The translations under genes and the position numbers were made by a program. Shown here piece by piece: positions 3,504 through 59,959 of a stretch of 64,000 nucleotides of DNA; the first letter of the stretch is position 1; each line of letters starts with the position of its first letter. Under the pieces are notes generated by a model. That model saw only the letters and a program-made list of their open reading frames with translations. It had not been told where the DNA came from and did no database searches. The stretch is from Macrostomum lignano (Eukaryota), in NCBI GenBank assembly GCA_002269645.1, contig NIVC01001550.1, positions 124,001 to 188,000 on the forward strand, written 5' to 3'.

Positions 3504-4845
3504 TTACGGCATCTCAGCAACTCCCCCTTGAGCCATGGAATCTCAGCAACTCCCCTTTGAGTCATGGCATCTCAGCAACTCCCAGCCCATTGAGCCATGG
3601 CATCTCAACAACTCCCAGCCCATTGAGCCATGGCATCTCAACAACTCCCAGCCCATTGAGCCATGGCATCTCAACAACTCCCAGCCCATTGAGCCATGGC
3701 ATCTCAACAACTCCCAGCCCATTGAGCCATGGCATCTCAACAACTCCCAGCCCATTGAGCCATGGCATCTCAACAACTCCCAGCCCATTGAGCCATGGCA
3801 TCTCAACAACTCCCAGCCCATTGAGCCATGGCATCTCAACAACTCCCAGCCCATTGAGCCATGGCATCTCAACAACTCCCAGCCCATTGAGCCATGGCAT
3901 CTCAACAACTCCCAGCCCATTGAGCCATGGCATCTCAACAACTCCCAGCCCATTGAGCCATGGCATCTCAACAACTCCCAGCCCATTGAGCCATGGCATC
4001 TCAACAACTCCCAGCCCATTGAGCCATGGCATCTCAGCAACTCCCCCTTGAGCTATGGATCTCCGCAACTCCCCCTTGAGCCATGGATCTCAGCAACTCC
4101 CCTTTAAGCCATGGATTCTTCGCAACTCCCCTTAAAGCCATGGATCTCCGCAACTCCCCTTTGAGCCATGGATCTCAGCAACTCCCTATTGAGCCATGGA
4201 TCTCAGCAACTCCCCTTTAAGCCATGGATTCTTCGCAACTCCCCTTAAAGCCATGGATCTCCGCAACTCCCCTTTGAGCCATGGATCTCAGCAACTCCCT
4301 ATTGAGCCATGGATCTCAGCAACTCCCTATTGAGCCATGGATCTCAGCAACTCCCCTTTAAGCCATGGATCTCCGCAACTCCCCTTTGAGCCATGGATCT
4401 CAGCAACTCCCCTTGAGCCATGGCATCTCAACAACTCCCAGCCCATTGAGCCAGGCATCTCAACAACTCCCAGCCCATTGAGCCTTGGCATCTCAACAAC
4501 TCCCAGCCCCTTGAGCCTTGGCCTCTCAGCAACTCCCCTTTGAGCGTTGGATCTCAGCAACTCCCCTTTGAGCCATGGATCTCAGCAACTCTCAGCCCAT
4601 TGTGCCTTGGCATCTCAACAACTCCCAGCCCTTTGAGCCTTGGCCTCTCAGCAACTCCCCTTTGAGCGTTGGATCTCAGCAACTCCCCTTTGAGCCATGG
4701 ATCTCAGCAACTCTCAGCCCATTGTGCCTTGGCATCTCAACAACTCCCAGCCCTTTGAGCCTTGGCATCTCAGCAACTCCCCTTTGAGCCTTGGCCTCTC
4801 AGCAACTCCCCTTTGAGCCTTGGCCTCTCAGCAACTTCCCCTTTG
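3504..4845 (+). repeat. Minisatellite, 33-bp homogeneous core with 29-31-bp flanking variants
   Basis: Unit GAGCCATGGCATCTCAACAACTCCCAGCCCATT, degenerating to GAGCCATGGATCTCAGCAACTCCCC(T)n. Confidence 0.96.
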
Positions 4846-10743: not shown

Positions 10744-13700
10744 CTATAGCAATTGGCTGGACTCCAGCTGCTCATAGGTGATCAATCTCGGGAATTCCTT
10801 GTACGCATCAAACGTTGGCATTCGCTGCTTGTGGTAGCCGAGGTGCGTGAACTGGTGAATGGCCACCGTCCTGTTTGTTATGAAGAGTTCGTCGCTTTTC
10901 TCAAAGCCCATCTGCTGCAGTTGAAGGCACACTCGCTGGCTTGGTGAGAGCCCTCCGGAGTGCCTTTGGAGACGTGGCGCCACTGCGGAGTGAGAGTGCG
11001 TTGGACTGTGCTTGCGAATGGCTAGATTAGCAATCCATTCTATTCCTTTATCCATTATAGGCTAGATTAGCAATCCATTCTATTATTTTATCCAATGTAG
11101 GCTAGATTAGCAATCCATTCTATTCCTTTATCCAATGTAGGCTAGATTAGCAATCCATTCTATTCCTTCATCCAATGTAGGCTAGATTAGCAATCCATTC
11201 TATTCTTTTATCCAATGTAGGCTAGATTAGCAATCCATTCTATTCCTTCATCCAATGTAGGCTAGATTAGCAATCCATTCTATTCTTTTATCCAATGTAG
11301 GCTAGATTAGCAATCCATTCAATTCCTTTATCCAATGTAGGCTAGATTAGCAATCCATTCTATTCCTTTACCCAATGTAGGCTAGATTAGCAATCCACTC
11401 TATTCCTTTATCCAATGTAGACTAGATTAGCAATCCATTCTATTCCTTTATCCAATGTAGACTAGATTAGCAATCCATTCTATTCCTTTATCCAATGTAG
11501 GCTAGATTAGCAATCCATTCTATTCTTTTATCCAATGTAGGCTAGATTAGCAATCCATTCTATTCCTTTATGTATGTAGGCTAGATTAGCAATCCACTCT
11601 ATTCCTTTATCCAATGTAGGCTAGATTAGCAATCCATTCTATTCCTTTATCTATGTAGGCTAGATTAGCAATCCATTCTATTCTTTTATCCAATGTAGGC
11701 TAGATTAGCAATCCATTCTATTCCTTTATCTATGTAGGCTAGATTAGCAATCCATTCTATTCTTTTATCCAATGTAGGCTAGATTAGCAATCCATTCTAT
11801 TCCTTTATGTATGTAGGCTAGATTAGCAATCCACTCTATTCCTTTATCCAATGTAGGCTAGATTAGCAATCCATTCTATTCCTTTATCCAATGTAGACTA
11901 GATTAGCAATCCATTCTATTCCTTTATGTATGTAGGCTAGATTAGCAATCCATTCTATTCCTTTATTGGTGTAGGCTAGATTAGCAATCCATTCTATTCC
12001 TTTATCCAATGTAGACTAGATTAGCAATCCATTCTATTCCTTTATCCAATGTAGGCTAGATTAGCAATCCATTCTATTCCTTTATCCAATGTAGACTAGA
12101 TTAGCAATCCATTCTATTCCTTTATTGGTGTAGGCTAGATTAGCAATCCATTCTATTCCTTTATCCAATGTAGGCTAGATTAGCAATCCATTCTACTCCT
12201 TTATCCATGTAGGCTAGATTAGCAATCCATTCTATTCCTTTATCCAATGTAGGCTAGATTAGCAATCCATTCTATTCCTTTATGTATGTAGGTTAGATTA
12301 GCAATCCATTCTATTCCTTTATCCAATGTAGGCTAGATTAGCAATCCATTCTATTCCTTTATCCAATGTAGGCTAGATTAGCAATCCATTCTATTCCTTT
12401 ATCCAATGTAGGCTAGATTAGCAATCCATTCTATTCCTTCATCCAATGTAGGCTAGATTAGCAATCCATTCTATTCCTTTATCCAATGTAGACTAGATTA
12501 GCAATCCATTCTATTCCTTTATCCAATGTAGGCTAGATTAGCAATCCATTTTATTCCTATATTCATGTAGGCTAGATTAGCAATCCATTTTATTCCTATA
12601 TTCATGTAGGCTAGATTAGCAATATATTCTATACCTTTATCCATGTAGGCTAGATTAGCAATCCATTCTCGTATTACAGAGCACCGCATCACTCAGCAAG
12701 CAATATTTAGAACAACAAGAGAAGCCCCTCACTACTCTTGCAGCGGCCGTAGATGCCGCTCCGCGGGTTAATCTTTGGCGAGAAGTAGGTCTCGTTGAGC
12801 ATGACAACTGTCGGGTTAGCTGCGTCCCTCTTCCACAGGTCGAACTGTTTCGTGAGCATTTCCGGGCCCGTAGTGGAGAAAATGGCTGAAACAGGAGTCG
12901 GGTGATCTGGCTTTGCAGAGAAGTTCTGTCCAATAATTTCTTGAAAAAAAAACAATTTTGCGACTCACAAACAGGAAAAAGGAAATTCCTTTTAGCCGTG
13001 CTTGGTCGGAACACGAACTGGATAACTTGGCGAAAGAACGGATGCTCAGGCGTGCAGCCCATGGCCGAGTTCATGGCTGAGTACTGCCTGCCGTGTAGAA
13101 ACTGAGTCTGGTGCCGCCGCTCGCTGTCCAAGAAGCAACTGTGCGATGCCAGACTGGGCAGCAGCGGCGCATGGCAGGTCATGTCTAAGTCCATGTACAG
13201 CCCTGTGCAAGCAGCGGGCGGATGCTGGGAGTTGGCATTCAATATCGGATGAGCGACGCCCAACGCTCTCGACCTCATGCAAATTTCAGAGGAAGATGCA
13301 GGTCTTTGCCCAGCCGAAATTCATGTCACACGCTTTGGTCGAGAGGTTTACCAGTTAGACTGGCAGTTGTACCCAATAGACTGGCAGTTTTATCAGTTAG
13401 ACTAGCAGTTTTACCCAATAGACTGGCAGTTTTACCCAACAGACTGGCAGCTTTACCCAACAGACTGGCAGTTTTACCCAACAGACTGGCAGTTTTACCC
13501 AACAGACTGGCAGTTTTACCCAATAGACTGGCAGTTTTACCCAACAGACTGGCAGTTTTACCCAACAGACTGGCAGTTTTACCCAACAGACTGGCAGTTT
13601 TACCCAACAGACTGGCAGCTTTACCCAACAGACTGGCAGTTTTACCCAACAGACTGGCAGTTTTACCCAACAGACTGGCAGTTTTACCCAATAGACTGGC

Positions 13701-16700
13701 AGTTTTACCCAATAGACTGGCAGTTTTACCCAACAGACTGGCAGTTTTACCCAACAGACTGGCAGTTTTACCTAATAGACTGGCAGTTTTACCCAATAGA
13801 TTGGCAGTTTTACCCAATGGACTGGCAGTTTTACCCAATAGACTGGCAGTTTTACCCAACAGACTGGCAGTTTTACCCAACAGACTGGCAGTTTTACCCT
13901 ATAGACTGGCAGTTTTACCCAATAGACTGGCAGTTTTACCTAATAGACTGGCAGTTTTACCCAATAGACTGGCAGTTTTACCCAATAGACTGGCAGTTTT
14001 ACCCAATAGACTGGCAGTTTTACCCAATAGACTGGCAGTTTTACCCAATAGACTGGCAGTTTTACCTAATAGACTGGCAGTTTTACCCAATAGACTGGCA
14101 GTTTTACCCAATAGACTGGCAGTTTTACCCAATGGACTGGCAGTTTTACCTAATAGACTGGCAGTTTTACCCAATAGACTGGCAGTTTTACCCAATAGAC
14201 TGGCAGTTTTACCCAATAGACTGGCAGTTTTACCCAATGGACTGACAGTTTTACCCAATAGACTGGCAGTTTTACCCAATAGACTGGCAGTTTTACCCAA
14301 TAGACTGGCAGTTTTACCCAACAGACTGGCAGTTTTACCCAACAGACTGGCAGTTTTACCTAACAGACTGGCAGTTTTACCCAACAGACTGGCAGTTTTA
14401 CCCAATAGACTGGCAGTTTTACCCAATAGACTGGCAGTTTTACCTAATAGACTGGCAGTTTTACCCAATAGACTGGCAGTTTTACCCAACAGACTGGCAG
14501 TTTTACCCAACAGACTGGCAGTTTTACCCAATAGATTGGCAGTTTTACCCAATGGACTGGCAGTTTTACCCAATAGACTGGCAGTTTTACCAATAGACTG
14601 GCAGTTTTACCCAATAGACTGGCAGTTTTACCCAATAGACTGGCAGTTTTACCCAATAGACTGGCAGTTTTACCCAACAGACTGGCAGTTTTACCTAATA
14701 GACTGGCAGTTTTACCCAACAGACTGGCAGTTTTACCCAACAGACTGGCAGTTTTACCCAATAGACTGGCAGTTTTACCCAATAGACTGGCAGTTTTACC
14801 CAACAGACTGGCAGTTTTACCTAATAGACTGGCAGTTTTACCCAACAGACTGGCAGTTTTACCCAACAGACTGGCAGTTTTACCCAACAGACTGGCAGTT
14901 TTACTCAACAGACTGGCAGTTTTACCCAATAGACTGGCAGTTTTACCCAATAGACTGGCAGTTTTACTCTGATGAACTGATGAACTTTTGAGTGGTTGGC
15001 TAAACCTGCCACTTCTGACTTACTCTATCGATTTTCGCTGGCACTGACCCTGAGCCTAACCTGTACTCGCCTGCTCAATTTTGTACACTCCACCCATCCC
15101 ATTCATTGTTGCTTGAGGCGCTCTCACACTCTCACAAGCCATAAATTTTTCACAGCATCCACCACCCTCTCCGGTGTTGAGAATGCAACAGCACTTCATC
15201 TGTGAATGCCCCGCCTTTCCTCAGGACAAGGCTCACCTACCTCCGCCCAAACCCGGACCTCTCCAACGTTTTCAGGCCACCTCGTCCGCTACCTGAGGGC
15301 TACCGGGCGAGCGACCACCCACCTCCTTGACTCTCCGGAAGGGGGCCCGCGCTGTGGACACCGGCACCACTGGATCACCCTTCGCGGCACCGCAACCACA
15401 AGCTCTGTGGTCGCCAGGGGTTAGCGGAATTGGTGACAACGCCTTCCCGCTGTATCCGGATGCCCGAAGCCCCCTGCAGCTGAGTCAAGTAAGTCACCAG
15501 CTCACAGCACCCACCACCCCACAGAACCCCTCACCCACAGCACCCATCACCCCACAGCACCCACCACCCCACAGCACCCATCACCCCACAGCACCCACCA
15601 CCCCACAGCACCCACCACCCACAGCGCCCACCACCCCACAGCACCCACCACCCCACAGCACCCACCACCCCACAGCGCCCACCACCCCACAGCACCCACC
15701 ACCCAACAGCACCCACCATCCAACAGCACCCACCACCCTACAGCACCCACCACCCCACAGCACCCATCACCCCACAGCACCCACCGCCATACATAGGAGC
15801 CACAACGCCACAGAACCCCAACCACCCCAAAGCACCCACCACTCATAGCACCGACACAACCGTCACATAACACACAGCACCCACCACTTACCGCCATATT
15901 TGTACAATATAAGATAGCGAATGGCGTCGGATCGTTGAATTTTGTGCGGGAAAGATTCAAACACTTTCATATGGGAGGAAAAGTGCTTCTGCATGAAGGC
16001 TTTAATAGCTTGGTCAGTCCACAGCACCACCTGCCAGTCGGGGTTCTTGGTCACGCAGGTCTGCAGCGCCTCTCTGTAAGGCGCTAAAACATTGGCATCG
16101 CGATAGACAAAATGAATTATTTTTGGCACTCCGGCGGGGGTCCGCGGTATCTTAGTTTCCGCCGCTGGCTTTGATATCAGTACCAGCGTCGTAACGTTGT
16201 ATCTGGTAGCGTTGCCGCCACCTCGGCCGCCGTCTTGACCCGCCTTATCAGCATTGATCAGTCTGTTCTCAAAGAGTCGATACGAATTGCCAAATGATTT
16301 TGCGCTGAATTTGTTGCTGACAAAGACCAGGCCAATTAGTGTGAGCACCGATAGAGTTGTTAGGATCTGTCAGGGGTTAAAATTTGGCACGAATTAATTT
16401 GTGGCTGAATGACATTCTGACACTCACTATGGCCTTCTGACACTCACTATGGCCTTCTGACACTCACTATGGCCTTCTGACACTCACTATGGCCTTTTGA
16501 CACACACTCTGACCTTCTGGCACTTAATCAACCTTCTGACACTCACTCTGACACCTTCTGACACTCACTCTGACACCTTTTGACACTCACTCTGACCTTC
16601 TGACACTCACTCTGACCTTCTGACACTCACTCTGACCCTCTGACACTTACTCCAAGCTTCTGACTCTCACTCAACTTTCTGACACTTACTCAACCTTCTG

Positions 16701-17069: not shown

Positions 17070-17431
17070 CTGACAGATGCACAGGTTTTTTGTTAACCCT
17101 ATCTTGTTGAGCTGAAGAATTATTATTGATCGCTCGCTTTGTTCAGTCTGATGCTGCTGCTTCACAGAGAGGGGGCAAAGCAGTTTCTCATTTTATCTAG
17201 ATATGCAAACTGCTGCCTGTTTGTCGTCTGGGGAGGAAGGGGTGGCCCGCATTGCCTGCCTGCCTTAAGCCTGCACGCGATTGTTTGGACAGGGGCTTGG
17301 AAACTAAGCCAGCCCAGTTCTACACCTCACTCCAAGCCAGCCGGCCAAGGACATCTAGGACTGCATCTGGATTGGAAGCTGTTACGGTGGACCCTGCCTA
17401 AAACTAAAGAAAGTTTGCCTGTACTGAATTG

Positions 17432-18155
17432 TCTGATCTGAATGAGAGTTTGCCTGTACTGAAGTCTGATCTGAATGAGAGTTTGCCTGTACTGAAGTCT
17501 GCTCTGAATGAGAGTTTGCCTGTACTGAAGTCTGATCTGAATGAGAGTTTGTCTGTACTGAAGTCTGATCTGAATGAGAGTTTGCCTGTACTGAAGTCTG
17601 ATCTGAATGAGAGTTTGCCTGTACTGAAGTCTGATCTGAATGAGAGTTTGCCTGTACTGAAGTCTGATCTGAATGAGAGTTTGCCTGTACTGAAGTCTGA
17701 TCTGAATGAGAGTTTGCCTTACTGAAGTCTGATCTGAATGAGAGTTTGCCTGTACTGAAGTCTGATCTGAATGAGAGTTTGCCTGTACTGAAGTCTGATC
17801 TGAATGAGAGTTTGCCTGTACTGAAGTCTGATCTGAATGAGAGTTTGCCTGTACTGAAGTCTGATCTGAATGAGAGTTTGCCTGTACTGAAGTCTGATCT
17901 GAATGAGAGTTTGCCTGTACTGAAGTCTGATCTGAATGAGAGTTTGCCTGTACTGAAGTCTGATCTGAATGAGAGTTTGCCTGTACTGAAGTCTGCTCTG
18001 AATGAGAGTTTGTCTGTACTGAAGTCTGATCTGAATGAGAGTTTGCCTGTACTGAAGTCTGCTCTGAATGAGAGTTTGCCTGTACTGAAGTCTGCTCTGA
18101 ATGAGAGTTTGCCTGTACTGAAGTCTGATCTGAATGAGAGTTTGCCTGTACTGAA
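17432..18155 (+). repeat. 33-bp minisatellite
   Basis: Unit CTGTACTGAAGTCTGATCTGAATGAGAGTTTGC. Confidence 0.96.
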
Positions 18156-18419
18156 TCTATAAAGACCCTATTATTATCATCAATTAGTCCATCGGCCAGC
18201 ATGCTCAATCCAGAGTTCAGCTTCCAGACCGCCTTGGCTGTATGCTTTGCCGCCCGCCCCCTCTCTCTCTCTCTGTGCCCCTCGCCGTGCTCAATGCTGA
18301 ACTACAATGCGCTAGCCCACCCCTACTCACTGAGCTGTGTCCATAGGGAGAGAATGGAAGGAGGGGTGAGGCGGGAGAGAAGGGAAGATTTAGGGGGAAG
18401 GAGAGAAATGAGGTGGAGC

Positions 18420-20519: not shown

Positions 20520-29124
<8,605 letters not shown>

Positions 29125-33827: not shown

Positions 33828-36800
33828 CTACACCGAGCTGATGAGTTGCGTCACTCGCAACGCCACCCCTTCCTGTGCTACGACGCCTCCCGCCCGCGGT
33901 CTGGCAGCCAGGCCGACTGTTGCTATGGCAACCGGCTGCCTAGCCGGCTCGGATCGGCAGCGAGCGGCGTCCAGCAGAGCCCGCTTGTAATTATCGTTCA
34001 TGAACAGGTAGAAAAACGGATTTAAGAATGCGTTCATGTAGCACATTATCCAGGACATGATGTACACGGAGTCTGTCTTTCGGATTGCGGTGCGCTGCAT
34101 CATTATCATGTTATCCAGGATGTGCCAGGGCAAATTGGCTAGCAGGAAGGACACCAGGACGCAGGTTACCATGCGGAAGGATTTGCTCAGCCGGCCGCTG
34201 GTAGCTGATGAAGCTGGGCGAGCGAACCGGTCGGAAAGCTGAGGCTTCTGCGAGGTGGCGCTCTAAAATTGGGGAGAATTTAGGAGATTCATAAGCAGTG
34301 ATGAGGCTGTTTTGATGTCGGAGGAGTGAACAGATCGAGCAGTGATGAGGCTGTAATGATCTCGGAGGAATGAACAGATTGAGCAGTGATGAGGCTGTAA
34401 TGATCTCGGAGGAGTGAACAGATTGAGCAGTGATGAGGCTGTAATGATCTCGGAGGAGTGAACAGATTGAGCAGTGATGAGGCTGCAATGCTCTCGGAGG
34501 AGTGAACAGATTGAGCAGTGATGAGGCTGTAATGATCTCGGAGGAGTGAACAGATCGAGCAGTGATGAGGCTGCAATGCTCTCGGAGGAGTGAGCAGAAG
34601 TTACACAGAGCCTTGGAGTACATTCAATCGAATGATTTATTCAAATCGAGCATAATTTTATCTGGCATTATGGCTGACTTGGCCGGTCTCAGTTCCCACT
34701 GCGGACTACAAATATGATTATGCATATTTTCATTTCCGCATTGCAGGGGTGGCCAGCATCTCTATTCTATGAGCCCTAGCTCATTATCTGCCGGACAGAT
34801 TTGATTAGGGCTCCGGGCAATAAAGTCTCGATAGTTCTTTTAGTAGCAGAAGAAGAAGAAGCCAGCAACAGTAGCGGAAGAAGAACCAGTAGTAGACGTT
34901 AGAGCCATCCCAGGCTTAATGAGCTCGGCAGTAATTAGCCCTGAGATCCGAGGCTGGCTTAGAGCTGCTCGGCTAAACTGTGCTCAGGAAAGGTGGGGTG
35001 GACACCGCATAGCGACTGATTTAAACTGATTGAAGCTGCTAGCAAAGCCACGCATCGAACAGTTTGCTGAAGCTGATAACCCGCTAGCTTAATCCGGCAT
35101 TGCGAAAGGATTATTGGAAGGACCGGCAGATTATCTCCCCTTCCCCCTTTGGTCGCTGTCTCTCTATCTCCATCAATATCCTTGTGCCCGAGCAAATTGA
35201 AGGCTTTGGATGTAGAATGGAGAAGCTCAAAAAACATACAGAAGGGAGGCTTCTCTCTTCCTTGCTCAGCCTCGAGGGAATTCCGCTTCATCCCAACACT
35301 CCGCCTCCCTTTTCTCCTTTTCTCTCTGACTTTGAGGTAGCAGCCAATCTAGCTGAGTTGCCTTTCATTCATTCCGCTTTCCGTTGTCGAAATTTCTACT
35401 TTTCTAGTTCAAATCATTCGCTCTCTCCGGAACTGTGGAGTCCCAATTTAAAAAAGTCACTTTTGCTTTTTACTCGGCCTCATCACACGAGTGATCGTTC
35501 AGACGGAGAGTTGCTTTACGCTATCTGGTTTGCTTTGACTCTTAGGGTTTGTCTGACCGTCGCCGGTGTTGGATCCCGGAAGAAATGATTCAGGGACGGA
35601 CTAAGCTTGTGGGTTAGCTTTTCCGAGTTTCAAACAATCAAGAGTTCCCGCAGAAGACTTTCTATAGATGACTACTGCTATGGTCCTCATCTACTGGTTT
35701 CCAGCTTGAGATTTCAATCTAGCGGGTCTCTATTTGTGGTCCCAGCTACGGTCTCAGCTACGGTCTCAGCTACGGTCCCAGCTACGGTCCCAGCTACGGT
35801 TCCAGCTACGGTCCCAGCTACGGTCCCAGCTACGGTCCCAGCTACGGTCCCAGCTACGGTCCCAGCTACGGTCCCAGCTACGGTCCCAGCTACAGTCCCA
35901 GCTACGGTCCCAGCTGAAGTCCCAGCTACGGTCTCAGCTGCAGTCCCAGCTGAAGTCCCAGCTGAAGTCCCAGCTGCAGTCCCAGCTACGGTCCCAGCTA
36001 CAGTCCCAGCTACGGTCTCAGCTACGGTCTCAGCTACGGTCCCAGCTACAGTCCCAGCTACGGTCTCAGCTACGGTCCCAGCTACAGTCCCAGCTACAGT
36101 CCCAGCTACGGTCCCAGCTACGGTCCCAGCTGAAGTCCCAGCTTTAGTCCCAGCTGCAGTCCCAGCTGAAGTCCCAGCTGAAGTCCCAGCTACAGTCCCA
36201 GCTACAATCCCAGCTACGGTCCCAGCTACGGTCTCAGCTACGGTCTCAGCTACGGTCCCAGCTACGGTCCCAGCTACGGTCCCAGCTCAAAACAGCCGCA
36301 ACTCTCACAATCGACGGCTGCAACACTCGAGGAGGATTTCGCCCTCCGCTGCCGCCCTGGCTGGCCCTGAGCAGCGTGTCGGAGCGCCCGACAGCCCTGG
36401 TGGTCCTGGCGCTACGCAAGATCCGCATGACCACGGCCGAGTAGAAGAACACCAGCAGAATGATGGGGATGTACAGGGCCAGCGTGCGCTGCACCAGAGC
36501 CGCGGTGGGATTTCTATAGATGGGATGCGAGCACCGGATCGGCTGGCTGCCGTTGGTGCTACTCCGGAACCCGGTGGCGATCACCCAGACGGGGAAAGTG
36601 GCGACATTCCTGGCCGCGGTCAGCAGCCACAAGGCGACGCAGAGTCGCACCTGGTTGGCCCGGTGCATCCAGCGCTTATGCGCGAACACGCAGTTAGTTG
36701 CCAGGAAACGGTCGAAGGCCACGGCGGTGACGCTGGCGACGCTGACGTTGGTGCTGGTGTAGTCGCAGGTGATCCACAGGTCGCAGAGCCACAGTGGCAG

Positions 36801-37070
36801 CGGCCAGGTGTCAAACAGGGTGTCGGCCAGGTAGCCGGGCAGGGCCGTGGCGCCGATCATGATGTCCGAAGTGACCATCAGGCCGACTATCAGGGCGTGT
36901 CCGGGCACCCGGCGGGGCTCCGGGCGGCGAAGGAAGACGGCCAGCACGGCGGAGTTGACCAAAGTGATGAAGCCGCTAAGCAGCAGGCCGAGGGTGCCGT
37001 AGAGCAGCCGCTGGCTGTCCGAGTACTGCCGCTTGAGTTCAGTTGGCGGAGTGAAATTCCAAGCGGGCAT
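33828..37070 (-). CDS. Class A GPCR, muscarinic/biogenic-amine-receptor-like, 2 exons, about 398 aa
   Basis: Exon 1 36309-37070 (TM1-5; CDLWITCDY with D3.32, DRF; donor GTGAGA, phase 0) and exon 2 33828-34262 (acceptor TTTTAG; TM6-7, CYMNAFLNPFFY). An extra ICL3 exon cannot be excluded. Confidence 0.9.
34293..34598 (+). repeat. 44-bp minisatellite in the GPCR intron
   Basis: GAGCAGTGATGAGGCTGTAATGATCTCGGAGGAGTGAACAGATT, about 7 copies. Confidence 0.93.
35737..36288 (+). repeat. 12-bp minisatellite in the GPCR intron
   Basis: CCAGCTACGGTC units. Confidence 0.95.
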
Positions 37071-37381: not shown

Positions 37382-38270
37382 TTGGCTAGATTAGCAATCC
37401 ACTCTATTCCTTTATCCATGTAGGCTAGATTAGCAATCCATTCTATTCCTTTATCCATGTAGGCTAGATTAGCAATCCACTCTATTCCTTTATTCGCGTA
37501 GGCTAGATTAGCAATCCATTCTATTCCTTTATTCACGTAGGCTAGATTAGCAATCCATTCTATTCCTTTATCCAATGTAGGCTAGATTAGCAATCCATTC
37601 TATTCCTTTATCCATGTAGGCTAGATTAGCAATCCATTCTATTCCTTTATCCATGTAGGCTAGATTAGCAATCCATTCTATTCCTTTATCCAATGTAGGC
37701 TAGATTAGCAATCCATTCTATTCCTTTATCCAATGTAGGCTAGATTAGCAATCCATTCTATTCCATTATCCATGTAGGCTAGATTAGCAATCCATTCTAT
37801 TCCTTTATCCATGTAGGCTAGATTAGCAATCCATTCTATTCCTTTATTCATGTAGGCTAGATTAGCAATCCACTCTATTCCTTTATCCAATGTAGGCTAG
37901 ATTAGCAATCCATTCTATTCCTTTATTCACGTAGGCTAGATTAGCAATCCATTCTATTCCTTTATCCAATGTAGGCTAGATTAGCAATCCATTCTATTCC
38001 TTTATCCAATGTAGGCTAGATTAGCAATCCATTCTATTCCTTTATTCATGTAGGCTAGATTAGCAATCCACTCTATTCCTTTATCCAATGTAGGCTAGAT
38101 TAGCAATCCATTCTATTCCTTTATTCACGTAGGCTAGATTAGCAATCCATTCTATTCCTTTATCCAATGTAGGCTAGATTAGCAATCCATTTTATTCCTT
38201 TATTCATGTAGGCTAGATTAGCAATCCATTCTATTCCTTAACTATCCAGGTAGGCTAGATCAGCAATTCA
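37382..38270 (-). repeat. Minisatellite, GGATTGCTAATCT-core family, 39/40-bp unit, between two divergent genes
   Basis: Same unit as 11021-12670. Confidence 0.97.
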
Positions 38271-38544
38271 TTTTACTGGCTAAATTTCGCCATTACTTAG
38301 CCAGCTAGAAGTGGTTTCCTAGAAATTCTCGCCCTCCAACTGTTGCTAAAAATAGCATCTCTCCCACGCGGCGTTGCTGGCAGCCAGGAGCGGCCCAACG
38401 ATGCCGAAGCCCATGGGAGTGGCCCGCCAGTCGGCTGAGAACTTTTCTCACCGAGGGCGCTGCAGCGATCAGAGACCACCGGAGGCAATAAAAAGTCTCT
38501 CGGCTACTGGGGGCGGGTCCCAGCAGAAGACAAGCTGTCTCAGC

Positions 38545-39722
38545 ATGGCGGCCGCCCGCAGTCAGCAGCAGCAGCAGCAGGATCTGGCTGTCCAGGCTGG
38601 CCTAGTCAGCTCCCTAACCAGCCTGTTCTCGCAGAAGCTCAACTCAACCGAGGAGCTCAAAAAGGTGCCAGTAGTGAAGCCTGTGCCGATTAGATTGAGG
38701 CCCCAACCGCCGCCGGTCTCGCACCTGGGCTACACTCAGGTTGGCAAGCCAGCTCTGATTCAGCTGGTGCATAATTATTCACCGGAGTATAACCAGCAGC
38801 ACCAGCAGCACCAGCAGCAGGCAGCTTACGTCACTAAAAAGACGAAGTACTCGTCCAGAAGCGACTTGAACGGAGCTGGGTCAGGCCAGGCGGGGACGGA
38901 CAAGTACCACCTGGAAGAGTGGACGGTCTACGAGACTCTGCCAGCCGACCTGGCAGCCACTTCAACTTCGTCCAAGTCGGCAGCCGAAGCCGAAGCTGAG
39001 CGTCGACGTTTGAAGGCGGAGTTTGAGGAGAAGCGCCGGCTTCAACGCGTCCAGCGGGAGCGGCAAAGGCCGGCGGCTCCGGCTGCGACGCCTGAGATGT
39101 TCACCAGAGAGGAGTGGACAGTCTACGAGACGGTGCCGAGCCAGCGAGTCCAGGTAACTCGGTCAGCTAGTTCCGGCGCTCACCGGACTGCTCAATTGAG
39201 TCAGCAGCAGCAGCAGCAGCAGCTGTACCGCTCGGAGAGCAGCGACTCTGTCCTTGGCTACCGGCGCTACTTGAATGACAGCCAACATGACAGCGGCAAG
39301 GCCACTCGCCAATCGACATCAACAAAGACTACTACTGCTACCACTGGTACTACCAAGACTGCCCACAATGGCGCCGCAGTGAACAATAGTACAAGACGCC
39401 CCGCCGCTTCCACTCCGGAAATCTTTACGGCGGAAGAGTGGACTGTGTATGAGACCATACCAGCCGTGACTTCCGGTCAGCAACACCAGCATCAGCAGTA
39501 TCGGCAGCAGGAGCAGCAGAAGCAGCACCAGCACCAGCACCAGCAAAAGCAGACTAAACGAAGCGTTCGTTGGACTTCGGATGAGGCGAAATCCACCGCT
39601 AGACGCAACACGCCCGATATTTATTCGAAAGAGGAGTGGACCGTGTACGAGACGGTTCCCATAGTGACAGAGTCTGGAAACTATCAGCAGCAACGGCAGA
39701 GTCAGAGACAGTTGGTGCACCA

Positions 39723-39781
<59 letters not shown>

Positions 39782-40824
39782 GGCTGTACAGAAGTCCCAG
39801 CCAAGAGTCCGTGATTGGCTACAAGCGTTACCTTGACGACGGTCGGCAAAAGTCCAAAGCGGTAGAGTACAGCAGCAGCAGCAGCAGCAGCAAGCGGCAG
39901 ACCTATCAGCACGACAACGGCCAGTTGCGCCAGCAGCCACGGGTGTCCACCAGAAGCGCCGAAAACCGAGTTGGCACCCCGGTGCGTACGGAGGAGTGGA
40001 CCGTTGTGCGCCGCGTGCCGGCCGACTCGGCTGAGCTGCTGCTCAGTGGGCAAGTCGACAGGGCCAGCTGGCGAACTGCTGAGGCCGCCCGGCAACGGCA
40101 GACAGCGGCGAGTCCGGCTGGGTATCGGCGGTACCTGCTGGCCGAGTCCAACAACAGCCTGGCGTCCGCAGGGGACTTTGAGCACCGCGCTGTGCCTGGT
40201 GAGCACCGGTGGGGATGGCGGTGAATCTTGGAGGGGTTTGTGGTAGAGCTTCGGGTAGAGATTGGAGTAGAGACTGGAGTAGAGACTGGAGTAGAGACTG
40301 GAGTAGAGCTTGGGGTAGAGACTGGAGTAGAGATTGGAGTAGAGACTGGAGTAGAGACTGGAGTAGAGACTGGAGTAGAGACTGGAGTAGAGACTGGAGT
40401 AGAGACTGGAGTAGAGACTGGAGTAGAGACTGGAGTAGAGACTGGAGTAGAGACTGGAGTAGAGACTGGAGTAGAGACTGGACGGAACCACCAAAGGTCT
40501 CTCTGTTCGACCCTTCATCGGATCGCTGGATGCAAAGCCTCTCATTGAATTCGCGTTTAAAAGTCTATAAACTCAAATAGAAGCCGAAAGATCGAGTTTT
40601 AAAATTTGTTTTAACTTATAAAATTTGCAGACTGGAGGCGGGCCGGGTCTGATCGAAGCGGTCTGACAGAGAGCGAAAACCCCTTCCACACCGGCTACCA
40701 TATCGCTCGGGACAACCCGATTTACAGCGGGATTTAAACTGAGGCAAGGGGCGGTTGACTGGCCGCTTGATGGATTGGTTGATTGATTAAGGATTGATTG
40801 ATTGATTAATTGATTGACTGATTA

Positions 40825-40869
<45 letters not shown>

Positions 40870-40904
40870 CTGATTAATTGATTGATTGATTGATTGACTG
40901 ATTA

Positions 40905-40941
<37 letters not shown>

Positions 40942-40948
40942 CTGATTA

Positions 40949-40993
<45 letters not shown>

Positions 40994-41032
40994 CTGATTA
41001 ATTGATTGATTGATTGATTGATTGACTGATTA

Positions 41033-41085
<53 letters not shown>

Positions 41086-41124
41086 CTGATTAATTGATTG
41101 ATTGATTGATTGATTGACTGATTA

Positions 41125-41181
<57 letters not shown>

Positions 41182-42100
41182 CTGATTAATTGATTGATTG
41201 ATTGATTAGTTGACTGATTGATCGATTGATTGATTGATTAATTGATTTATCGGTTGCATGATTGATTAATTGATTGATTGGTTGATTGATTTTTTTGTTT
41301 ATTTATTTATTTATCGATTGCTTGATTGAATGATTGATTGATTGATTGATTTTTTGGTTGATTAATTAATCAATTATCAGTTAATTGATTGATTGGTTGA
41401 TTATTTAAATGATTGATTGATGGACTGATTGATCGATTGATTGATTGACTACTTAATTGATTGACTGATTGATTGATTAATTCATCGGTTGATTGATTGA
41501 TTGATTAGTTCATCGGATGATTGATTGATTGATTGATTCATCGATCGATTGATTGATTGATTAGTTCATCGGATGATTAATTGGTTGATTAGTTCATCGA
41601 TCGATTGATTGGTTGATTAGTTCATCGGTTGATTGATTGATTGATTAATTCATCGATCGATTGATTGGTTGATTAGTTCATCGGTTGATTGATTGGTTGA
41701 TTAGTTCATCGGTTGATTGATTGATTGATTAATTCATCGATCGATTGATTGGTTGATTAGTTCATCGGTTGATTGATTGGTTGATTAGTTCATCGGTTGA
41801 TTGATTGGTTGGTTGCTTTTTTAAATGACTTTTTTAAATGATTGATTATTCGATCGAATAAATTTTTATTACTCTTCGTATGAAGCATAGTATAGCCTAG
41901 CAGTAGTCAATCAGGGTTGTCAATCACCCCCCCCCACCGCCCCAGACTCCAAGCTGGACATACCCGACTACTATTTCTATTCGTATGAGAACGGCAACAA
42001 GATGGAGAAGCTCAGGCAGCTGTGCTCACCCACCAGCGAGCGGCGGAACTCGCGAAACGGCCAGCCGCTTGAGAAATTGAACGAATCAACTCGGCTTTGA
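38545..42100 (+). CDS. Uncharacterised Gln-rich protein with repeated EEWTVYETxP and GY[RK]RYL motifs, 2 exons, about 602 aa
   Basis: Open frame 38545-40198, donor G|GTGAGC, acceptor CCCCAG at 41945, exon 2 41946-42100 in matching phase 1 (DSKLDIPDYYFYSYE...). Repeats diverge at synonymous positions. The start codon is uncertain (the frame is open further upstream). Confidence 0.82.
40255..40481 (+). repeat. 12-bp minisatellite, intronic
   Basis: GTAGAGACTGGA units. Confidence 0.95.
40770..41815 (+). repeat. (GATT)n compound microsatellite, intronic
   Basis: GATT runs (reverse complement of the 8-9.3 kb AATC block motif) with patterned interruptions. Confidence 0.95.
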
Positions 42101-42382: not shown

Positions 42383-56974
<14,592 letters not shown>

Positions 56975-57804
56975 GATTTGGCTTTCAACTGCTGCACATT
57001 TCCTGGCGGGGCGCCACCGCTCTTATAAAGCGAGCTCCGACCCAAAACCGAATTATCCGTGCGGCCCACCCCTCACCCCAAGGCAGGCCCTTCCCATCGC
57101 CATTCGCGGCAGTTGGATAATTTATTCCCCAAGCTCCCCCACCGGCTCTCGGGGATTTAAAGGGCCTGGAGGCGGAGGTCGGGGATTTTAGGTTGGGAGA
57201 TTTTGTAATCCCATTCGAAGTCCTCCTCTGCTAGCGACAGGCCCTTTTCGCGTGCCAGCTGTGAAACACGGCAGCGGTCTGTTGGCAGCTGCTGTATTGG
57301 TGAATTCGCACAAGCACTGTTACTGCAGTCCCCCGAAAAAGGCCACCGCACGAAAGACAGCCGTCAGCACCTCCCGCAGTCCCAGATCCCCCGCCTTACT
57401 ACACTTTATCACTCCTGTCCCTGTGTTGCATTTTCACCTTGGGTTTCAGTTGACTTCAGCTTTCCGCGCAGCGACAACAGAAGACACCCCGGAGACTTCA
57501 TGCTAACGGAGGCGGACCAAGGGAATTCCAGCACCGCGGAGCCCCAAATAGAGTGCGAATGTGACAAGTGCTGTCCTCGTCTGTTCTGCAAAATTCGGTT
57601 ACGGATCTGCTTGGTTTAGGACGCGATTATCCCATTCTCACCTGCCAGTTGTCTGCTTGGCAACTGCCGGGCGTGGGATTAAAGCAGTGTGGGAATCTTA
57701 AAACTGAGTATTGAAGCTATCGGTTCCATCACTGTGCTGGGAGCCCCATCTGCCTGTCTCTCATTTTCTCTCCCATTCTGTATTGACTGTCTGTTACTCA
57801 CTGA

Positions 57805-58635
<831 letters not shown>

Positions 58636-59019
58636 GTATTTCCTGGAGTCTGTCTACTCGCATGTTGGTGCCAGCAAAGCGGTCTCCATGCCCGTGCCTG
58701 ACCCAAATCAAGGACTCGACAATGATGGATACTCGCTATCGCCCCTCATCTCCAGCATTCGCCTCTCTGCTCGCTTTTGCCTCATAAATTAGTTTCCCGA
58801 GCATAAAAGACTGGGATTGGGAATCCAGAGTCTCTCCATCGTGCCTTGCTCAGCCTGTTCCCAACCTGTTTGCTCCAACACGCCCCCTGTCGGAGTGAGC
58901 GGCCCTCCAACACCAGCGCACTAATTGAATGGCCAAATGCACTGGGCGGCTCCAAGTCCGATCTGGCGGGATCTTTGCATAGTGCAATTAGTCATGTGTG
59001 TGTGATCTCCCTCTGCTTA

Positions 59020-59560
59020 TCTCCCTCTTTCCCCCCCCCTCTCCCTGTCTCCCATCTCTCCCTCTCCCTCTCCCTGTCTCCCTGTCTTCCATCTCTTCCT
59101 CTCCCTCTCCCTGTCTCCCCCCTCTCCCTGTCTCCCCCTCTCCCTGTCTCCCCATCTCCCTGTCTTCCATCTCTTCCTCTCCCTCTCCCTGTCTCCCCCT
59201 CTCCCTGTCTCCCCCTCTCCCTGTCTCCCCATCTCCCTGTCTTCCATCTCTTCCTCTCCCTCTCCCTGTCTCCCCCTCTCTCCCTCTCCCTCTCCCTGTC
59301 TCCCCCCTCTCCCTGTCTCCCATCTCTCCCTCTCCCTCTCCCTGTCTCCCCCTCTCCCTGTCTCCCATCTCTCCCTCCCCCTCTCCCTGTCTCCCATCTC
59401 TCCCTCTCCCTCTCCCTGTCTTCCCCCTCTCACTCTCCGGGTATCCCTTGCACTCTCCCTCTCTCCCCCTCTCCTTATCTCCCTCGTCATCCCGCACTCC
59501 CTCTCCCTCTCTCCCTCTTCCTCTCCCTCTCCCACTCCCTCTCCCTGTCTCTCCCCACTC
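59020..59560 (+). repeat. Pyrimidine-rich degenerate repeat
   Basis: CTCCCTGTCTCCC-type units. Confidence 0.88.
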
Positions 59561-59959
59561 CTTTGCCTATATAGTTTATAATCACCGAAAGCAGCCCAGA
59601 ACACAGCAGATTATCCAGCCCCCCCCCCATTTACTCTATTTTGTTATAATAAAACAAAATCCACCCCAGCTGCCTGATCAAGAGATGAAGAAAGTGGATT
59701 CCACACATTCTCCTTTTACCGACCGCTATCTGGCAGCCCTGGGAGACCTGGCAGCGCTCAGCTATGGCTCGAAACTCGTACTTCCCAGTTGCACTTTTTC
59801 TCTTGGTCAAATCAATTCACTTTCTTTGCGGCAATTTTTGGGACGACAACTCAGAAAAGAACGTATAAAGTGAACAGCGGCGTTCGGGAATGAGAAGATA
59901 AAGGAGAAATAAATGCGATAAAACGGAGCCTCAAGATGTGCAGTATGGAGATTTTATAA

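What the first reader, a model, noticed from the sequence alone, without database searches (positions are those of the whole stretch)
38545..42100. Protein built from an unrecognised modular motif pair: TPxx[FY]xxEEWTVYETxP and LYRSxSxxSVxGY[RK]RYL
Seen: five copies of EEWTV (38914, 39109, 39433, 39631, 39991) and three of GY[RK]RYL (near 39255, 39815, 40120) occur in the order A-A-B, A-A-B, A'-B', separated by poly-Q/T/S spacers. Unlike the DNA satellites here, the copies differ mainly at third codon positions (the first Thr of the motif uses ACG, ACA, ACT, ACC), so selection acts on the peptide. I do not recognise the motifs as a named domain. Inference: a disordered multivalent scaffold with short linear binding motifs, possibly cytoskeletal or condensate-forming, and phospho-regulated through TP, RSxS and Tyr sites.
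Basis: partly seen in the sequence, partly recalled or inferred. Interest (0 to 1): 0.8.

Follow-up and report, generated by a model that had tools for sequence, protein, structure and literature searches.

The report
Macrostomum-only disordered protein with repeated motifs
This is a real two-exon flatworm gene for a mostly disordered protein carrying five copies of an EEWTV motif and three of a GY[RK]RYL motif; its only detectable relatives are uncharacterised Macrostomum lignano proteins, so it is a modestly interesting lineage-restricted gene of unknown function.

Summary
EEWTV occurs five times and GY[RK]RYL three times, in the order A-A-B, A-A-B, A'-B', all in one reading frame and nowhere else in the window. 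The core copies differ almost only at synonymous third positions.

The only homologues in about 5.8 billion proteins, and in an exhaustive profile search of 1.84 billion representatives, are uncharacterised Macrostomum lignano proteins. They share the motif order, N-terminal blocks, intron position and phase. Their gene models are RNA-seq based.

No match to the protein or its motifs came from Pfam, PDB sequences, Foldseek against PDB or full-text literature. A UniProt label, "CCDC66 domain-containing", on two M. lignano models is not reproduced.

AlphaFold2 predicts disorder, helical ER/K and polyQ spacers, and one moderately confident β-hairpin pairing a conserved basic strand (VTKKTKYSSR) with the first A motif.

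The conserved terminal exon is 40631-40737 and ends in an NPxY/F-like tail.

Best reading: a taxon-restricted, basic, disordered multivalent protein whose β-strand-forming motifs are its functional units. Partner and cell biology are unknown. The phospho, cytoskeletal and condensate ideas remain untested. Interest is modest.

The parts
38545..40198 (+). Exon 1 CDS (aa 1-551 plus the first base of a split Asp codon). ATG 38545 has a good Kozak context (A at -3, G at +4). In-frame upstream ATGs at 38401 and 38413 cannot be excluded as starts.
   Evidence: Full-length tblastn alignment to M. lignano P0001, E=7e-43.
38599..38688 (+). Conserved N-terminal block 1: GLVSSLTSLFSQKLNSTEELKKVPVVKPVP. 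It looks WH2-like by eye, but that was rejected.
   Evidence: about 60% identity to M. lignano across the three N-terminal blocks; hhalign against WH2, probability 0.8%.
38719..38772 (+). Conserved N-terminal block 2: SHLGYTQVGKPALIQLVH.
38827..38862 (+). Conserved basic strand YVTKKTKYSSRS, predicted to pair with motif A1 in a β-hairpin.
   Evidence: VTKKT.Y.SR invariant between the species; AF2 strand 95-107 paired with 121-133, pLDDT about 78-84 in the short construct.
38893..38943 (+). Motif A1: GTDKYHLEEWTVYETLP (no TP).
38980..39063 (+). Short ER/K-type charged helix spacer (AAEAEAERRRLKAEFEEKRRLQRVQRER). The M. lignano counterpart is a spacer of about 115 aa.
   Evidence: helix, pLDDT about 80.
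39088..39138 (+). Motif A2: TPEMFTREEWTVYETVP.
39223..39276 (+). Motif B1: LYRSESSDSVLGYRRYLN.
39412..39462 (+). Motif A3: TPEIFTAEEWTVYETIP.
39610..39660 (+). Motif A4: TPDIYSKEEWTVYETVP. It is preceded at 39559-39591 by a second basic strand-like stretch, RSVRWTSDEAK.
39784..39837 (+). Motif B2: LYRSPSQESVIGYKRYLD. It is preceded by the long polyQ tract at 39717-39781.
39970..40020 (+). Motif A5 (A'): VGTPVRTEEWTVVRRVP. Counterpart of M. lignano STPFRVEEWTVTRQIP.
40099..40143 (+). Motif B3 (B'): QTAASPAGYRRYLLA.
40199..40630 (+). Phase-1 intron of 432 nt (donor G|GTGAGC, acceptor TTTGCAG|AC) containing a 12-mer satellite array at 40255-40482.
   Evidence: Same donor hexamer, phase and split codon (G|AC, Asp) as the M. 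lignano gene in L001. TRF.
40631..40737 (+). Revised terminal exon: (D)WRRAGSDRSGLTESENPFHTGYHIARDNPIYSGI, stop TAA at 40735-40737. It carries a conserved [DE]NP[IV][YF] tail.
   Evidence: tblastn of P0001 against 40669-40731. (reciprocal best hit falls exactly in the M. lignano terminal exon, L001 6040-6102, E=1.3e-4, 26.6 bits against 17.3 bits for the next hit).
41946..42100 (+). It is not supported as part of this gene: an open frame of 70 codons with an AG|AC acceptor, but no conservation and no Pfam match.
   Evidence: best L001 hit 16.9 bits, E about 0.9, scattered; no Pfam.

Best explanation
What it is. The locus is a genuine two-exon gene (38545-40198 and 40631-40737, 586 aa) of a macrostomid flatworm that is related to Macrostomum lignano but clearly distinct from it.

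The product. It is a basic (pI about 9.8), cysteine-free, mostly disordered protein with no signal peptide. It belongs to a family detectable only in Macrostomum.

Functional units. These are short, individually conserved elements:
- five acidic-aromatic A motifs, ([ST]P[ED][IM][FY]xx)EEWTVYETΦP;
- three basic-aromatic B motifs, Sx[DE]S[VI]xGY[RK]RxL;
- three N-terminal blocks;
- a C-terminal [DE]NP[IV][YF] tail.

Spacers. The motifs are separated by spacers whose sequence is free to change (ER/K helix in M. lignano, polyQ or Q/H here) but which are predicted to stay helical or extended.

Proposed mechanism (inferred). The A motif acts as a β-strand that binds by strand pairing. At least the first copy pairs within the molecule with the conserved basic strand VTKKTKYSSR. 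The repeated A and B copies give the protein several equivalent contact sites, so it would work as a multivalent linker or scaffold.

What is shown and what is inferred. Shown: gene reality, motif conservation, spacer turnover, absence from known families, predicted disorder. Inferred: strand-pairing binding and a scaffold role. Unknown: the partner and the cellular site.
For: - Motif counts and positions, and their uniqueness within the window.
- Synonymous against non-synonymous codon differences of 28:5 in the core.
- Full-length homology to M. lignano P0001, E=7e-43, with the same motif order.
- Identity to M. lignano is about 70-88% in paired motif copies and 60% in the N-terminal blocks, against 20% elsewhere.
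- Identical donor hexamer, intron phase and split Asp codon, plus a conserved terminal exon.
- The M. lignano GenBank models come from a genome-guided RNA-seq transcriptome (PMC5730564).
- No Pfam family at E<=10, no significant PDB sequence match and no significant Foldseek match.
- An exhaustive HMMER search with the A-B profile against 1.84 billion representatives found only M. lignano plus one bacterial β-propeller coincidence.
- AF2 on the full protein: mean pLDDT 41.5, with helices in the ER/K and polyQ spacers.
- AF2 on aa 93-250: a β-hairpin between residues 95-107 and 121-133 (the A1 motif), pLDDT about 78-84.
- The same 8-mer EEWTVYET occurs in bacterial globular proteins, at positions I take to be β-strands. 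This is consistent with strand propensity.
Against: - There is no direct transcript or protein evidence for this species.
- The AF2 alignments hold only 3-4 sequences, and the hairpin is only moderately confident.
- A2-A5 and the B motifs were not predicted to pair with anything.
- No partner, localisation or phenotype is known.
- 'Only in Macrostomum' is limited by database coverage. Most free-living flatworm transcriptomes may be absent from the databases searched.
Confidence: 0.55

Rival explanations
1. It is a divergent member of the CCDC66 family, a microtubule-associated centrosome and cilium protein, as the UniProt names of two M. lignano gene models suggest.
For: Cluster members A0A1I8IV03 and A0A1I8I4B6 are named 'CCDC66 domain-containing protein'. 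The protein is basic and disordered, as many microtubule-associated proteins are. CCDC66 is a real microtubule-associated protein.
Against: Pfam-A, which I expect to include the CCDC66 model, gives no hit at E<=10 for the window protein or P0001/P0002, and none at E<=1 for the two named models. The only plausible source of the label is the ER-rich repeat of M. lignano. That repeat is low-complexity, and here it is reduced to a 28-aa helix. The A and B motifs are not known from CCDC66.
Confidence: 0.05
2. The A motif is a phosphotyrosine or sorting signal (TxYxx[VI] ITSM-like, YxxΦ, or a Y/W-type LIR), so the protein is a tyrosine-phosphorylated docking adaptor or an autophagy receptor.
For: Four of the five copies read T-V-Y-E-T-[LVI], which fits TxYxx[VI/L], YxxΦ and the generic LIR pattern (read directly). 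The C-terminus carries NPxY/F-like motifs.
Against: The invariant part across all copies and both species is EEWTV, not the Tyr. The Tyr is V in A5 here and T in the M. lignano counterpart, and Φ at +3 is lost in M. lignano 'WTVYHSAA'. There is no transmembrane segment or receptor context. These patterns are short and match often by chance.
Confidence: 0.1
3. The A and B motifs are strands of a folded repeat domain, such as a β-propeller or β-solenoid with long low-complexity loops, rather than independent linear motifs.
For: The only non-flatworm profile hit is a bacterial repeat protein that I judge by eye, from its sequence, to be a β-propeller of the Reg_prop type, with repeats 'DGAEEWTVYNTSNSGLP'. 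The octamer also occurs in bacterial proteins that look like HemD. AF2 gives one hairpin involving A1.
Against: AF2 finds no compact fold (pTM 0.20-0.25). Motif spacing varies from 65 to 120 aa here and differs in M. lignano. One A copy has decayed in M. lignano without loss of the ORF. Foldseek finds nothing.
Confidence: 0.08
4. It is not a functional gene: a chance ORF, a pseudogene or a translated satellite in a repeat-rich region.
For: The window is crowded with satellites that produce long spurious ORFs. No transcript data exist for this species.
Against: The ORF is 616 codons, with a 551-codon exon. Motif copies differ at synonymous sites, which satellites do not show. There is an orthologue with conserved exon structure in M. 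lignano, annotated from RNA-seq.
Confidence: 0.03

Closest known systems
Macrostomum lignano hypothetical proteins BOX15_Mlig023050g2 (PAA52311.1, UniProt A0A267DSN6), BOX15_Mlig033590g1 (PAA57830.1) and the frameshifted BOX15_Mlig023050g1 (PAA86144.1)
   Same: Same N-terminal blocks, same order of A and B motifs, same phase-1 intron with the same split Asp codon, similar C-terminal NPxF/Y tail, same basic pI and no cysteines.
   Different: The spacers have been replaced: long ER/K repeats and a poly-Pro tract in M. lignano, against polyQ, Q/H, T-rich and poly-S here. One A copy has decayed in M. lignano (STVYETP) and M. lignano has one extra copy (NVEEWTVYHS). Identity outside the motifs is only about 20%. 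None of these proteins has been characterised.
CCDC66 (Pfam CCDC66 domain; microtubule-associated ciliopathy protein)
   Same: An automatic UniProt name on two M. lignano models. Both have ER-rich helical segments and a basic, disordered character.
   Different: No Pfam match for any family member with the current library. The ER-rich tract is not conserved in the window protein. CCDC66 is not known to carry the A or B motifs.
Repeat-motif basic disordered proteins such as tau/MAP2-type microtubule-associated proteins, and sticker-and-spacer scaffolds (resemblance in mode of action only; comparison from my own knowledge, not tested)
   Same: Short conserved motifs repeated along a basic, disordered chain, with variable spacers. 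Multivalency is the likely point.
   Different: No sequence relationship. The motif here is acidic-aromatic and strand-forming. No cytoskeletal evidence exists.
Bacterial β-strands carrying the same octamer: a Reg_prop-like propeller (P0004) and HemD-like proteins (L003-L016). I assigned both families by eye from the sequences, without a scan.
   Same: Identical EEWTVY(E/N)T peptide, often followed by Pro.
   Different: These appear to be single strands inside globular folds. They have no B motif, no low-complexity spacers and no other similarity. This is convergence, not homology.

Membership tests
Macrostomum 'EEWTV/GYRRYL' protein family (unnamed; M. lignano BOX15_Mlig023050/033590) | Full-length sequence homology with the same order of A and B motifs and the same N-terminal blocks | tested here: met
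   tblastn E=7e-43 over aa 8-620 of P0001; alignments; profile search E=2.9e-55.
Macrostomum 'EEWTV/GYRRYL' protein family (unnamed; M. lignano BOX15_Mlig023050/033590) | Shared gene structure: one phase-1 intron splitting an Asp codon before a short terminal exon with an NPxF/Y tail | tested here: met
CCDC66 family | Significant match to the Pfam CCDC66 domain profile | tested here: not met
   No Pfam family at E<=10 for the window protein, P0001 and P0002, and none at E<=1 for the two UniProt-named models.
CCDC66 family | Microtubule binding and centrosome or cilium localisation | not testable with these tools
   Needs experiments.
WH2 actin-binding motif | Amphipathic helix followed at canonical spacing by LKKV/T, with a match to a WH2 profile | tested here: not met
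   No Pfam hit for aa 13-83 at E<=10.
β-propeller (Reg_prop-like) or other folded repeat domain | Regularly spaced repeat units predicted to fold into a compact domain | tested here: not met
   Irregular spacing; AF2 pTM 0.20-0.25 and mostly pLDDT<50; no Foldseek hit.
Disordered multivalent short-motif (sticker-and-spacer) proteins | Predicted disorder, with motifs conserved while spacers turn over | tested here: met
   spacer replacement seen.
Disordered multivalent short-motif (sticker-and-spacer) proteins | Demonstrated binding of the motifs to a partner or to each other | not testable with these tools
   The only hint is the AF2 hairpin between VTKKTKYSSR and A1.
ITSM / YxxΦ / LIR tyrosine-based motifs | Conserved Tyr and +3 hydrophobic residue in every functional copy, in a suitable context | tested here: not met
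   The pattern fits four copies. The Tyr is V or T in the terminal copies and Φ is lost in one M. lignano copy. There is no membrane context.
ER/K single α-helix spacer | Charged E/R/K-rich segment predicted as an isolated helix | tested here: met
   AF2 helix at aa 146-173, pLDDT about 80. This is prediction only.

The most novel reading that the evidence does not exclude
The acidic-aromatic A strands (EEWTVYE) and the basic-aromatic strands (VTKKTKYSSR and the B motif GYRRYL) are mutually complementary 'zipper' elements. They would pair within and between molecules, so the protein self-assembles into a network or fibre. The mesh of that network would be set by helical ER/K or polyQ spacers that are interchangeable in evolution. 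This would be a previously undescribed self-assembling sticker-spacer system specific to macrostomid flatworms.
Probability: 0.12. Interest if true: 0.6.

Novelty: new variant of a known kind. Interest (0 to 1): 0.33.

Why it matters
If the reading is right, this is a clean natural example of a rule often assumed for disordered proteins. Ten-residue motifs, their order and even copy-specific residues are frozen. Meanwhile the spacers between them are swapped wholesale between chemically different low-complexity types (ER/K helix against polyQ). It also adds an undescribed motif pair to the short list of taxon-restricted flatworm genes that could be tested by RNAi in Macrostomum lignano, which is a tractable model. 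In practical terms, it corrects the gene model and flags an automatic 'CCDC66' label as unreliable. It does not open a long-standing question, and genes of this general kind are common in every genome.

Tried and rejected
- First protein search with the raw sequence. PolyQ words filled the candidate list, so I repeated it with low complexity removed. Still only M. lignano.
- WH2 idea for 'VSSLTSLF...LKKV'. Rejected.
- CCDC66 label. Not reproducible.
- PDB sequence search with the A-B profile. Only OTX2 at E=0.017, a chance resemblance 'RYPDIFMREE'.
- Foldseek of the hairpin-helix model. Nothing below E=0.8.
- Metagenome scan for DNA encoding EEWTVYET. Fifteen loci with one copy each, mostly bacterial proteins that look like HemD. 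No relatives.
- Synteny check between the M. lignano locus and the window by tblastx. Only satellite matches, so uninformative.
- Literature searches for the motif strings and for the M. lignano gene identifiers, including supplements of three M. lignano papers. Nothing found.
- A protein search with the neighbouring GPCR ORF, meant to place the species. No hit in the word-index search. Pfam confirms it is a 7tm_1 receptor.
- The first fragment alignment, which included the N-terminal blocks, was misaligned by MAFFT and was discarded.
Full report
**Observation**

The ORF 38374..40224 on the + strand contains, from the ATG at 38545, five EEWTV and three GY[RK]RYL.
- EEWTV is at nt 38914, 39109, 39433, 39631 and 39991.
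- GY[RK]RYL is at nt 39256, 39817 and 40120.
- Neither pattern occurs anywhere else in the six-frame translation of the window.
- The order is A-A-B, A-A-B, A'-B', as reported.
- From the protein's composition I calculate about 2e-4 EEWTV per protein, so five copies cannot be chance.

The copies are not a DNA repeat.
- In the 10-codon core EEWTVYETxP of copies 1-4 there are 28 synonymous against 5 non-synonymous pairwise codon differences.
- 32 of the 37 nucleotide differences lie at third positions.
- The Thr codons are ACG, ACA, ACT, ACC and ACC.
- TRF finds only CAG-type tracts inside the coding region.

**Relatives**

A search of about 5.8 billion proteins returned only Macrostomum lignano hypothetical proteins. 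PolyQ words had filled the candidate list, so I repeated the search with an alignment stripped of low complexity. It again returned only three M. lignano proteins, one of them frameshifted.

An exhaustive HMMER search with a profile of the A-spacer-B unit (alignment A3) ran against 1.84 billion representatives. It found two hits.
- The M. lignano cluster, E=2.9e-55.
- One bacterial protein, E=3e-5, with repeats 'DGAEEWTVYNTSNSGLP'. By eye its sequence looks like a β-propeller with a secretion tail. I did not scan it. I read this as convergence.

Other searches found nothing relevant.
- A scan of JGI metagenomes for DNA encoding EEWTVYET gave 15 single-copy matches. Most are bacterial proteins that look like HemD, with no B motif.
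- Pfam gives nothing at E<=10.
- PDB sequences give nothing meaningful.
- Full-text literature has no relevant paper with the motif strings.

**Orthology and gene model**

M. lignano P0001 aligns to the window ORF over its whole length (E=7e-43). The order of elements is the same in both:
- VSSLxSLF...LK[KR]V;
- LG[YF]T..GKPA.I.[IL]V;
- [YF]VTKKT[KR]Y[ST]SR;
- A1 (E[EQ]WTVYETLP);
- a charged helix;
- A2 (TP[ED][IM]F.REEWTVY[ED]TVP);
- B1 (DSV[LI]GYRRYL);
- further A and B copies;
- A' (TP.R.EEWTV.R.[VI]P).

In M. lignano one internal A copy has decayed (STVYETP) and there is one extra copy.

Identity to M. lignano is uneven.

| Region | Identity |
|---|---|
| Paired A and B motif copies | 70-88% |
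| N-terminal blocks | 60% |
| Everything else | 20% |

The spacers have changed in kind. M. lignano has long ER/K repeats and a poly-Pro tract. The window protein has polyQ, Q/H, T-rich and poly-S tracts.

The M. lignano gene in locus L001 has two exons. Exon 1 ends at G|GTGAGC in phase 1, and exon 2 starts at CAG|AC, giving a split Asp codon. The window has the same donor hexamer at 40198|40199 and two candidate acceptors that both restore G|AC.
- The peptide after TTTGCAG|AC at 40631 is ...ESENPFHTGYHIARDNPIYSGI*. Its best match in L001 falls exactly in the M. lignano terminal exon (DNSNVFHQQFNVSRENPVFRG; E=1.3e-4, 26.6 bits, next hit 17.3 bits).

I therefore revise the model to exon 1 38545-40198, a 432-nt intron holding a 12-mer satellite, and exon 2 40631-40737, giving 586 aa. 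In-frame ATGs at 38401 and 38413 leave the start slightly uncertain.

There is no transcript evidence for this species. The GenBank BOX15 models of M. lignano were derived from a genome-guided RNA-seq transcriptome (PMC5730564). The orthologue and its splice are therefore transcript-supported.

**Nature of the protein**

- Composition: pI 9.8, no cysteine, 14.5% Gln, and only 19.6% order-promoting residues. M. lignano is likewise basic (pI 9.83) and has no cysteine.
- AlphaFold2 on exon 1: mean pLDDT 41.5 and pTM 0.20. Confident structure is limited to the ER/K helix (aa 146-173) and helices in Q-rich tracts.
- AlphaFold2 on aa 93-250, with the second module and the M. lignano counterparts as the alignment: a β-hairpin between YVTKKTKYSSRSD (95-107) and HLEEWTVYETLPA (121-133), pLDDT about 78-84, followed by the helix. 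A2 and B1 stayed unstructured.
- Foldseek against the PDB found nothing.

The A motif thus looks like a strand-forming, acidic-aromatic element. At least one copy has a conserved basic partner strand in the same molecule. The same octamer also occurs in bacterial globular proteins, at positions I take to be strands. That is consistent with strand propensity, although neither their family nor their secondary structure was tested.

**Known families considered**

- **CCDC66.** Two other M. lignano models of the same cluster are called 'CCDC66 domain-containing protein' in UniProt. Neither they nor any other member hits a Pfam family here. The only candidate region, the ER-rich repeat, is not conserved in the window protein. 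I treat the label as a low-complexity artefact.
- **WH2.** An apparent WH2 motif (LKKV after an amphipathic stretch) fails both Pfam and a profile comparison.
- **Tyrosine-based motifs.** ITSM, YxxΦ and LIR patterns fit four copies, but the Tyr is not conserved in the terminal copies of either species.
- **Motif B phospho-site.** The 'RSxS' of motif B is not conserved in M. lignano. TP before the A motif is conserved in most copies.

**Interpretation**

- Shown: a real, selected, taxon-restricted gene; conserved short motifs in fixed order; wholesale spacer turnover; predicted disorder; no known family.
- Inferred: the motifs act as multiple strand-pairing contact sites of a linker or scaffold protein.
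- Unknown: partner, localisation and regulation.

The exon, the RSxS and Tyr details and the cellular role are not.

**Assessment**

This is an uncharacterised lineage-restricted disordered protein with an undescribed motif pair. It is a neat case of motif conservation with spacer replacement, but it belongs to a common general class. Interest is about 0.33.

Noticed in passing
window 40255-40482: A 12-mer satellite, (GTAGAGACTGGA) x19 at 95% identity, sits inside the gene's only intron. It also creates spurious ORFs on both strands, for example 40209-40580 (+) and part of 39319-40545 (-).
   Followed up: partly
window 40767-41815: A (GATT)n-derived complex satellite of about 1 kb starts only 30 nt after the revised stop codon. 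No canonical AATAAA lies between the stop and the satellite, so the 3' end of the mRNA is unclear. AATAAA-like signals occur near 41858 and 42208.
   Followed up: no
window 38000-38272: A 39/79-nt satellite ends 273 nt upstream of the ATG. The gene is an island of unique sequence between tandem arrays.
   Followed up: no
window 38401 and 38413: Two in-frame ATGs lie upstream of the assumed start at 38545. They would add 48 or 44 residues that have no counterpart in M. lignano.
   Followed up: partly
window 36246-37070 (-): An ORF of 274 aa with a rhodopsin-family 7tm_1 domain (Pfam E=1.2e-22). This is a GPCR gene or exon about 1.5 kb upstream on the opposite strand. The word-index protein search found no close relative.
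   Followed up: partly
window 15863-16348 (-): An ORF with a DXD glycosyltransferase sugar-binding region (Gly_transf_sug, E=2.2e-12).
   Followed up: no
window 22252-23211 (+) and 45511-46236 (+): Retroelement fragments: a gag-aspartyl protease ORF and an RNase H / RVT_3 ORF.
   Followed up: no
window-wide (e.g. 454-2670, 3535-4107, 13222-14991, 17327-18208, 26938-28676, 43374-44607, 50053-52208, 57689-59873): Very high density of different tandem satellites, which produce long repetitive pseudo-ORFs in several frames. GC skew swings strongly between arrays.
   Followed up: no
P0004; loci L003-L016 (metagenome contigs): The octamer EEWTVY(E/N)T, often followed by x-P, recurs in bacterial proteins. 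By eye these look like a Reg_prop-type propeller and uroporphyrinogen-III-synthase-like (HemD) proteins ('VEEWTVYETxPE...FTSASTV'). No scan was run on them. I read this as convergence at the peptide level.
   Followed up: partly
UniProt A0A1I8IV03 / A0A1I8I4B6 (P0005, P0006): The automatic name 'CCDC66 domain-containing protein' for M. lignano models of this family is not reproduced with current Pfam. It probably stems from the ER-rich low-complexity repeat.
   Followed up: yes
window 39559-39591: A second basic stretch, RSVRWTSDEAK, lies upstream of A4 and resembles the N-terminal partner strand TKKTKYSSRSD. M. lignano has 'RRTVRSEDRR' upstream of its extra A copy. This may be a third recurring motif class.
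   Followed up: no
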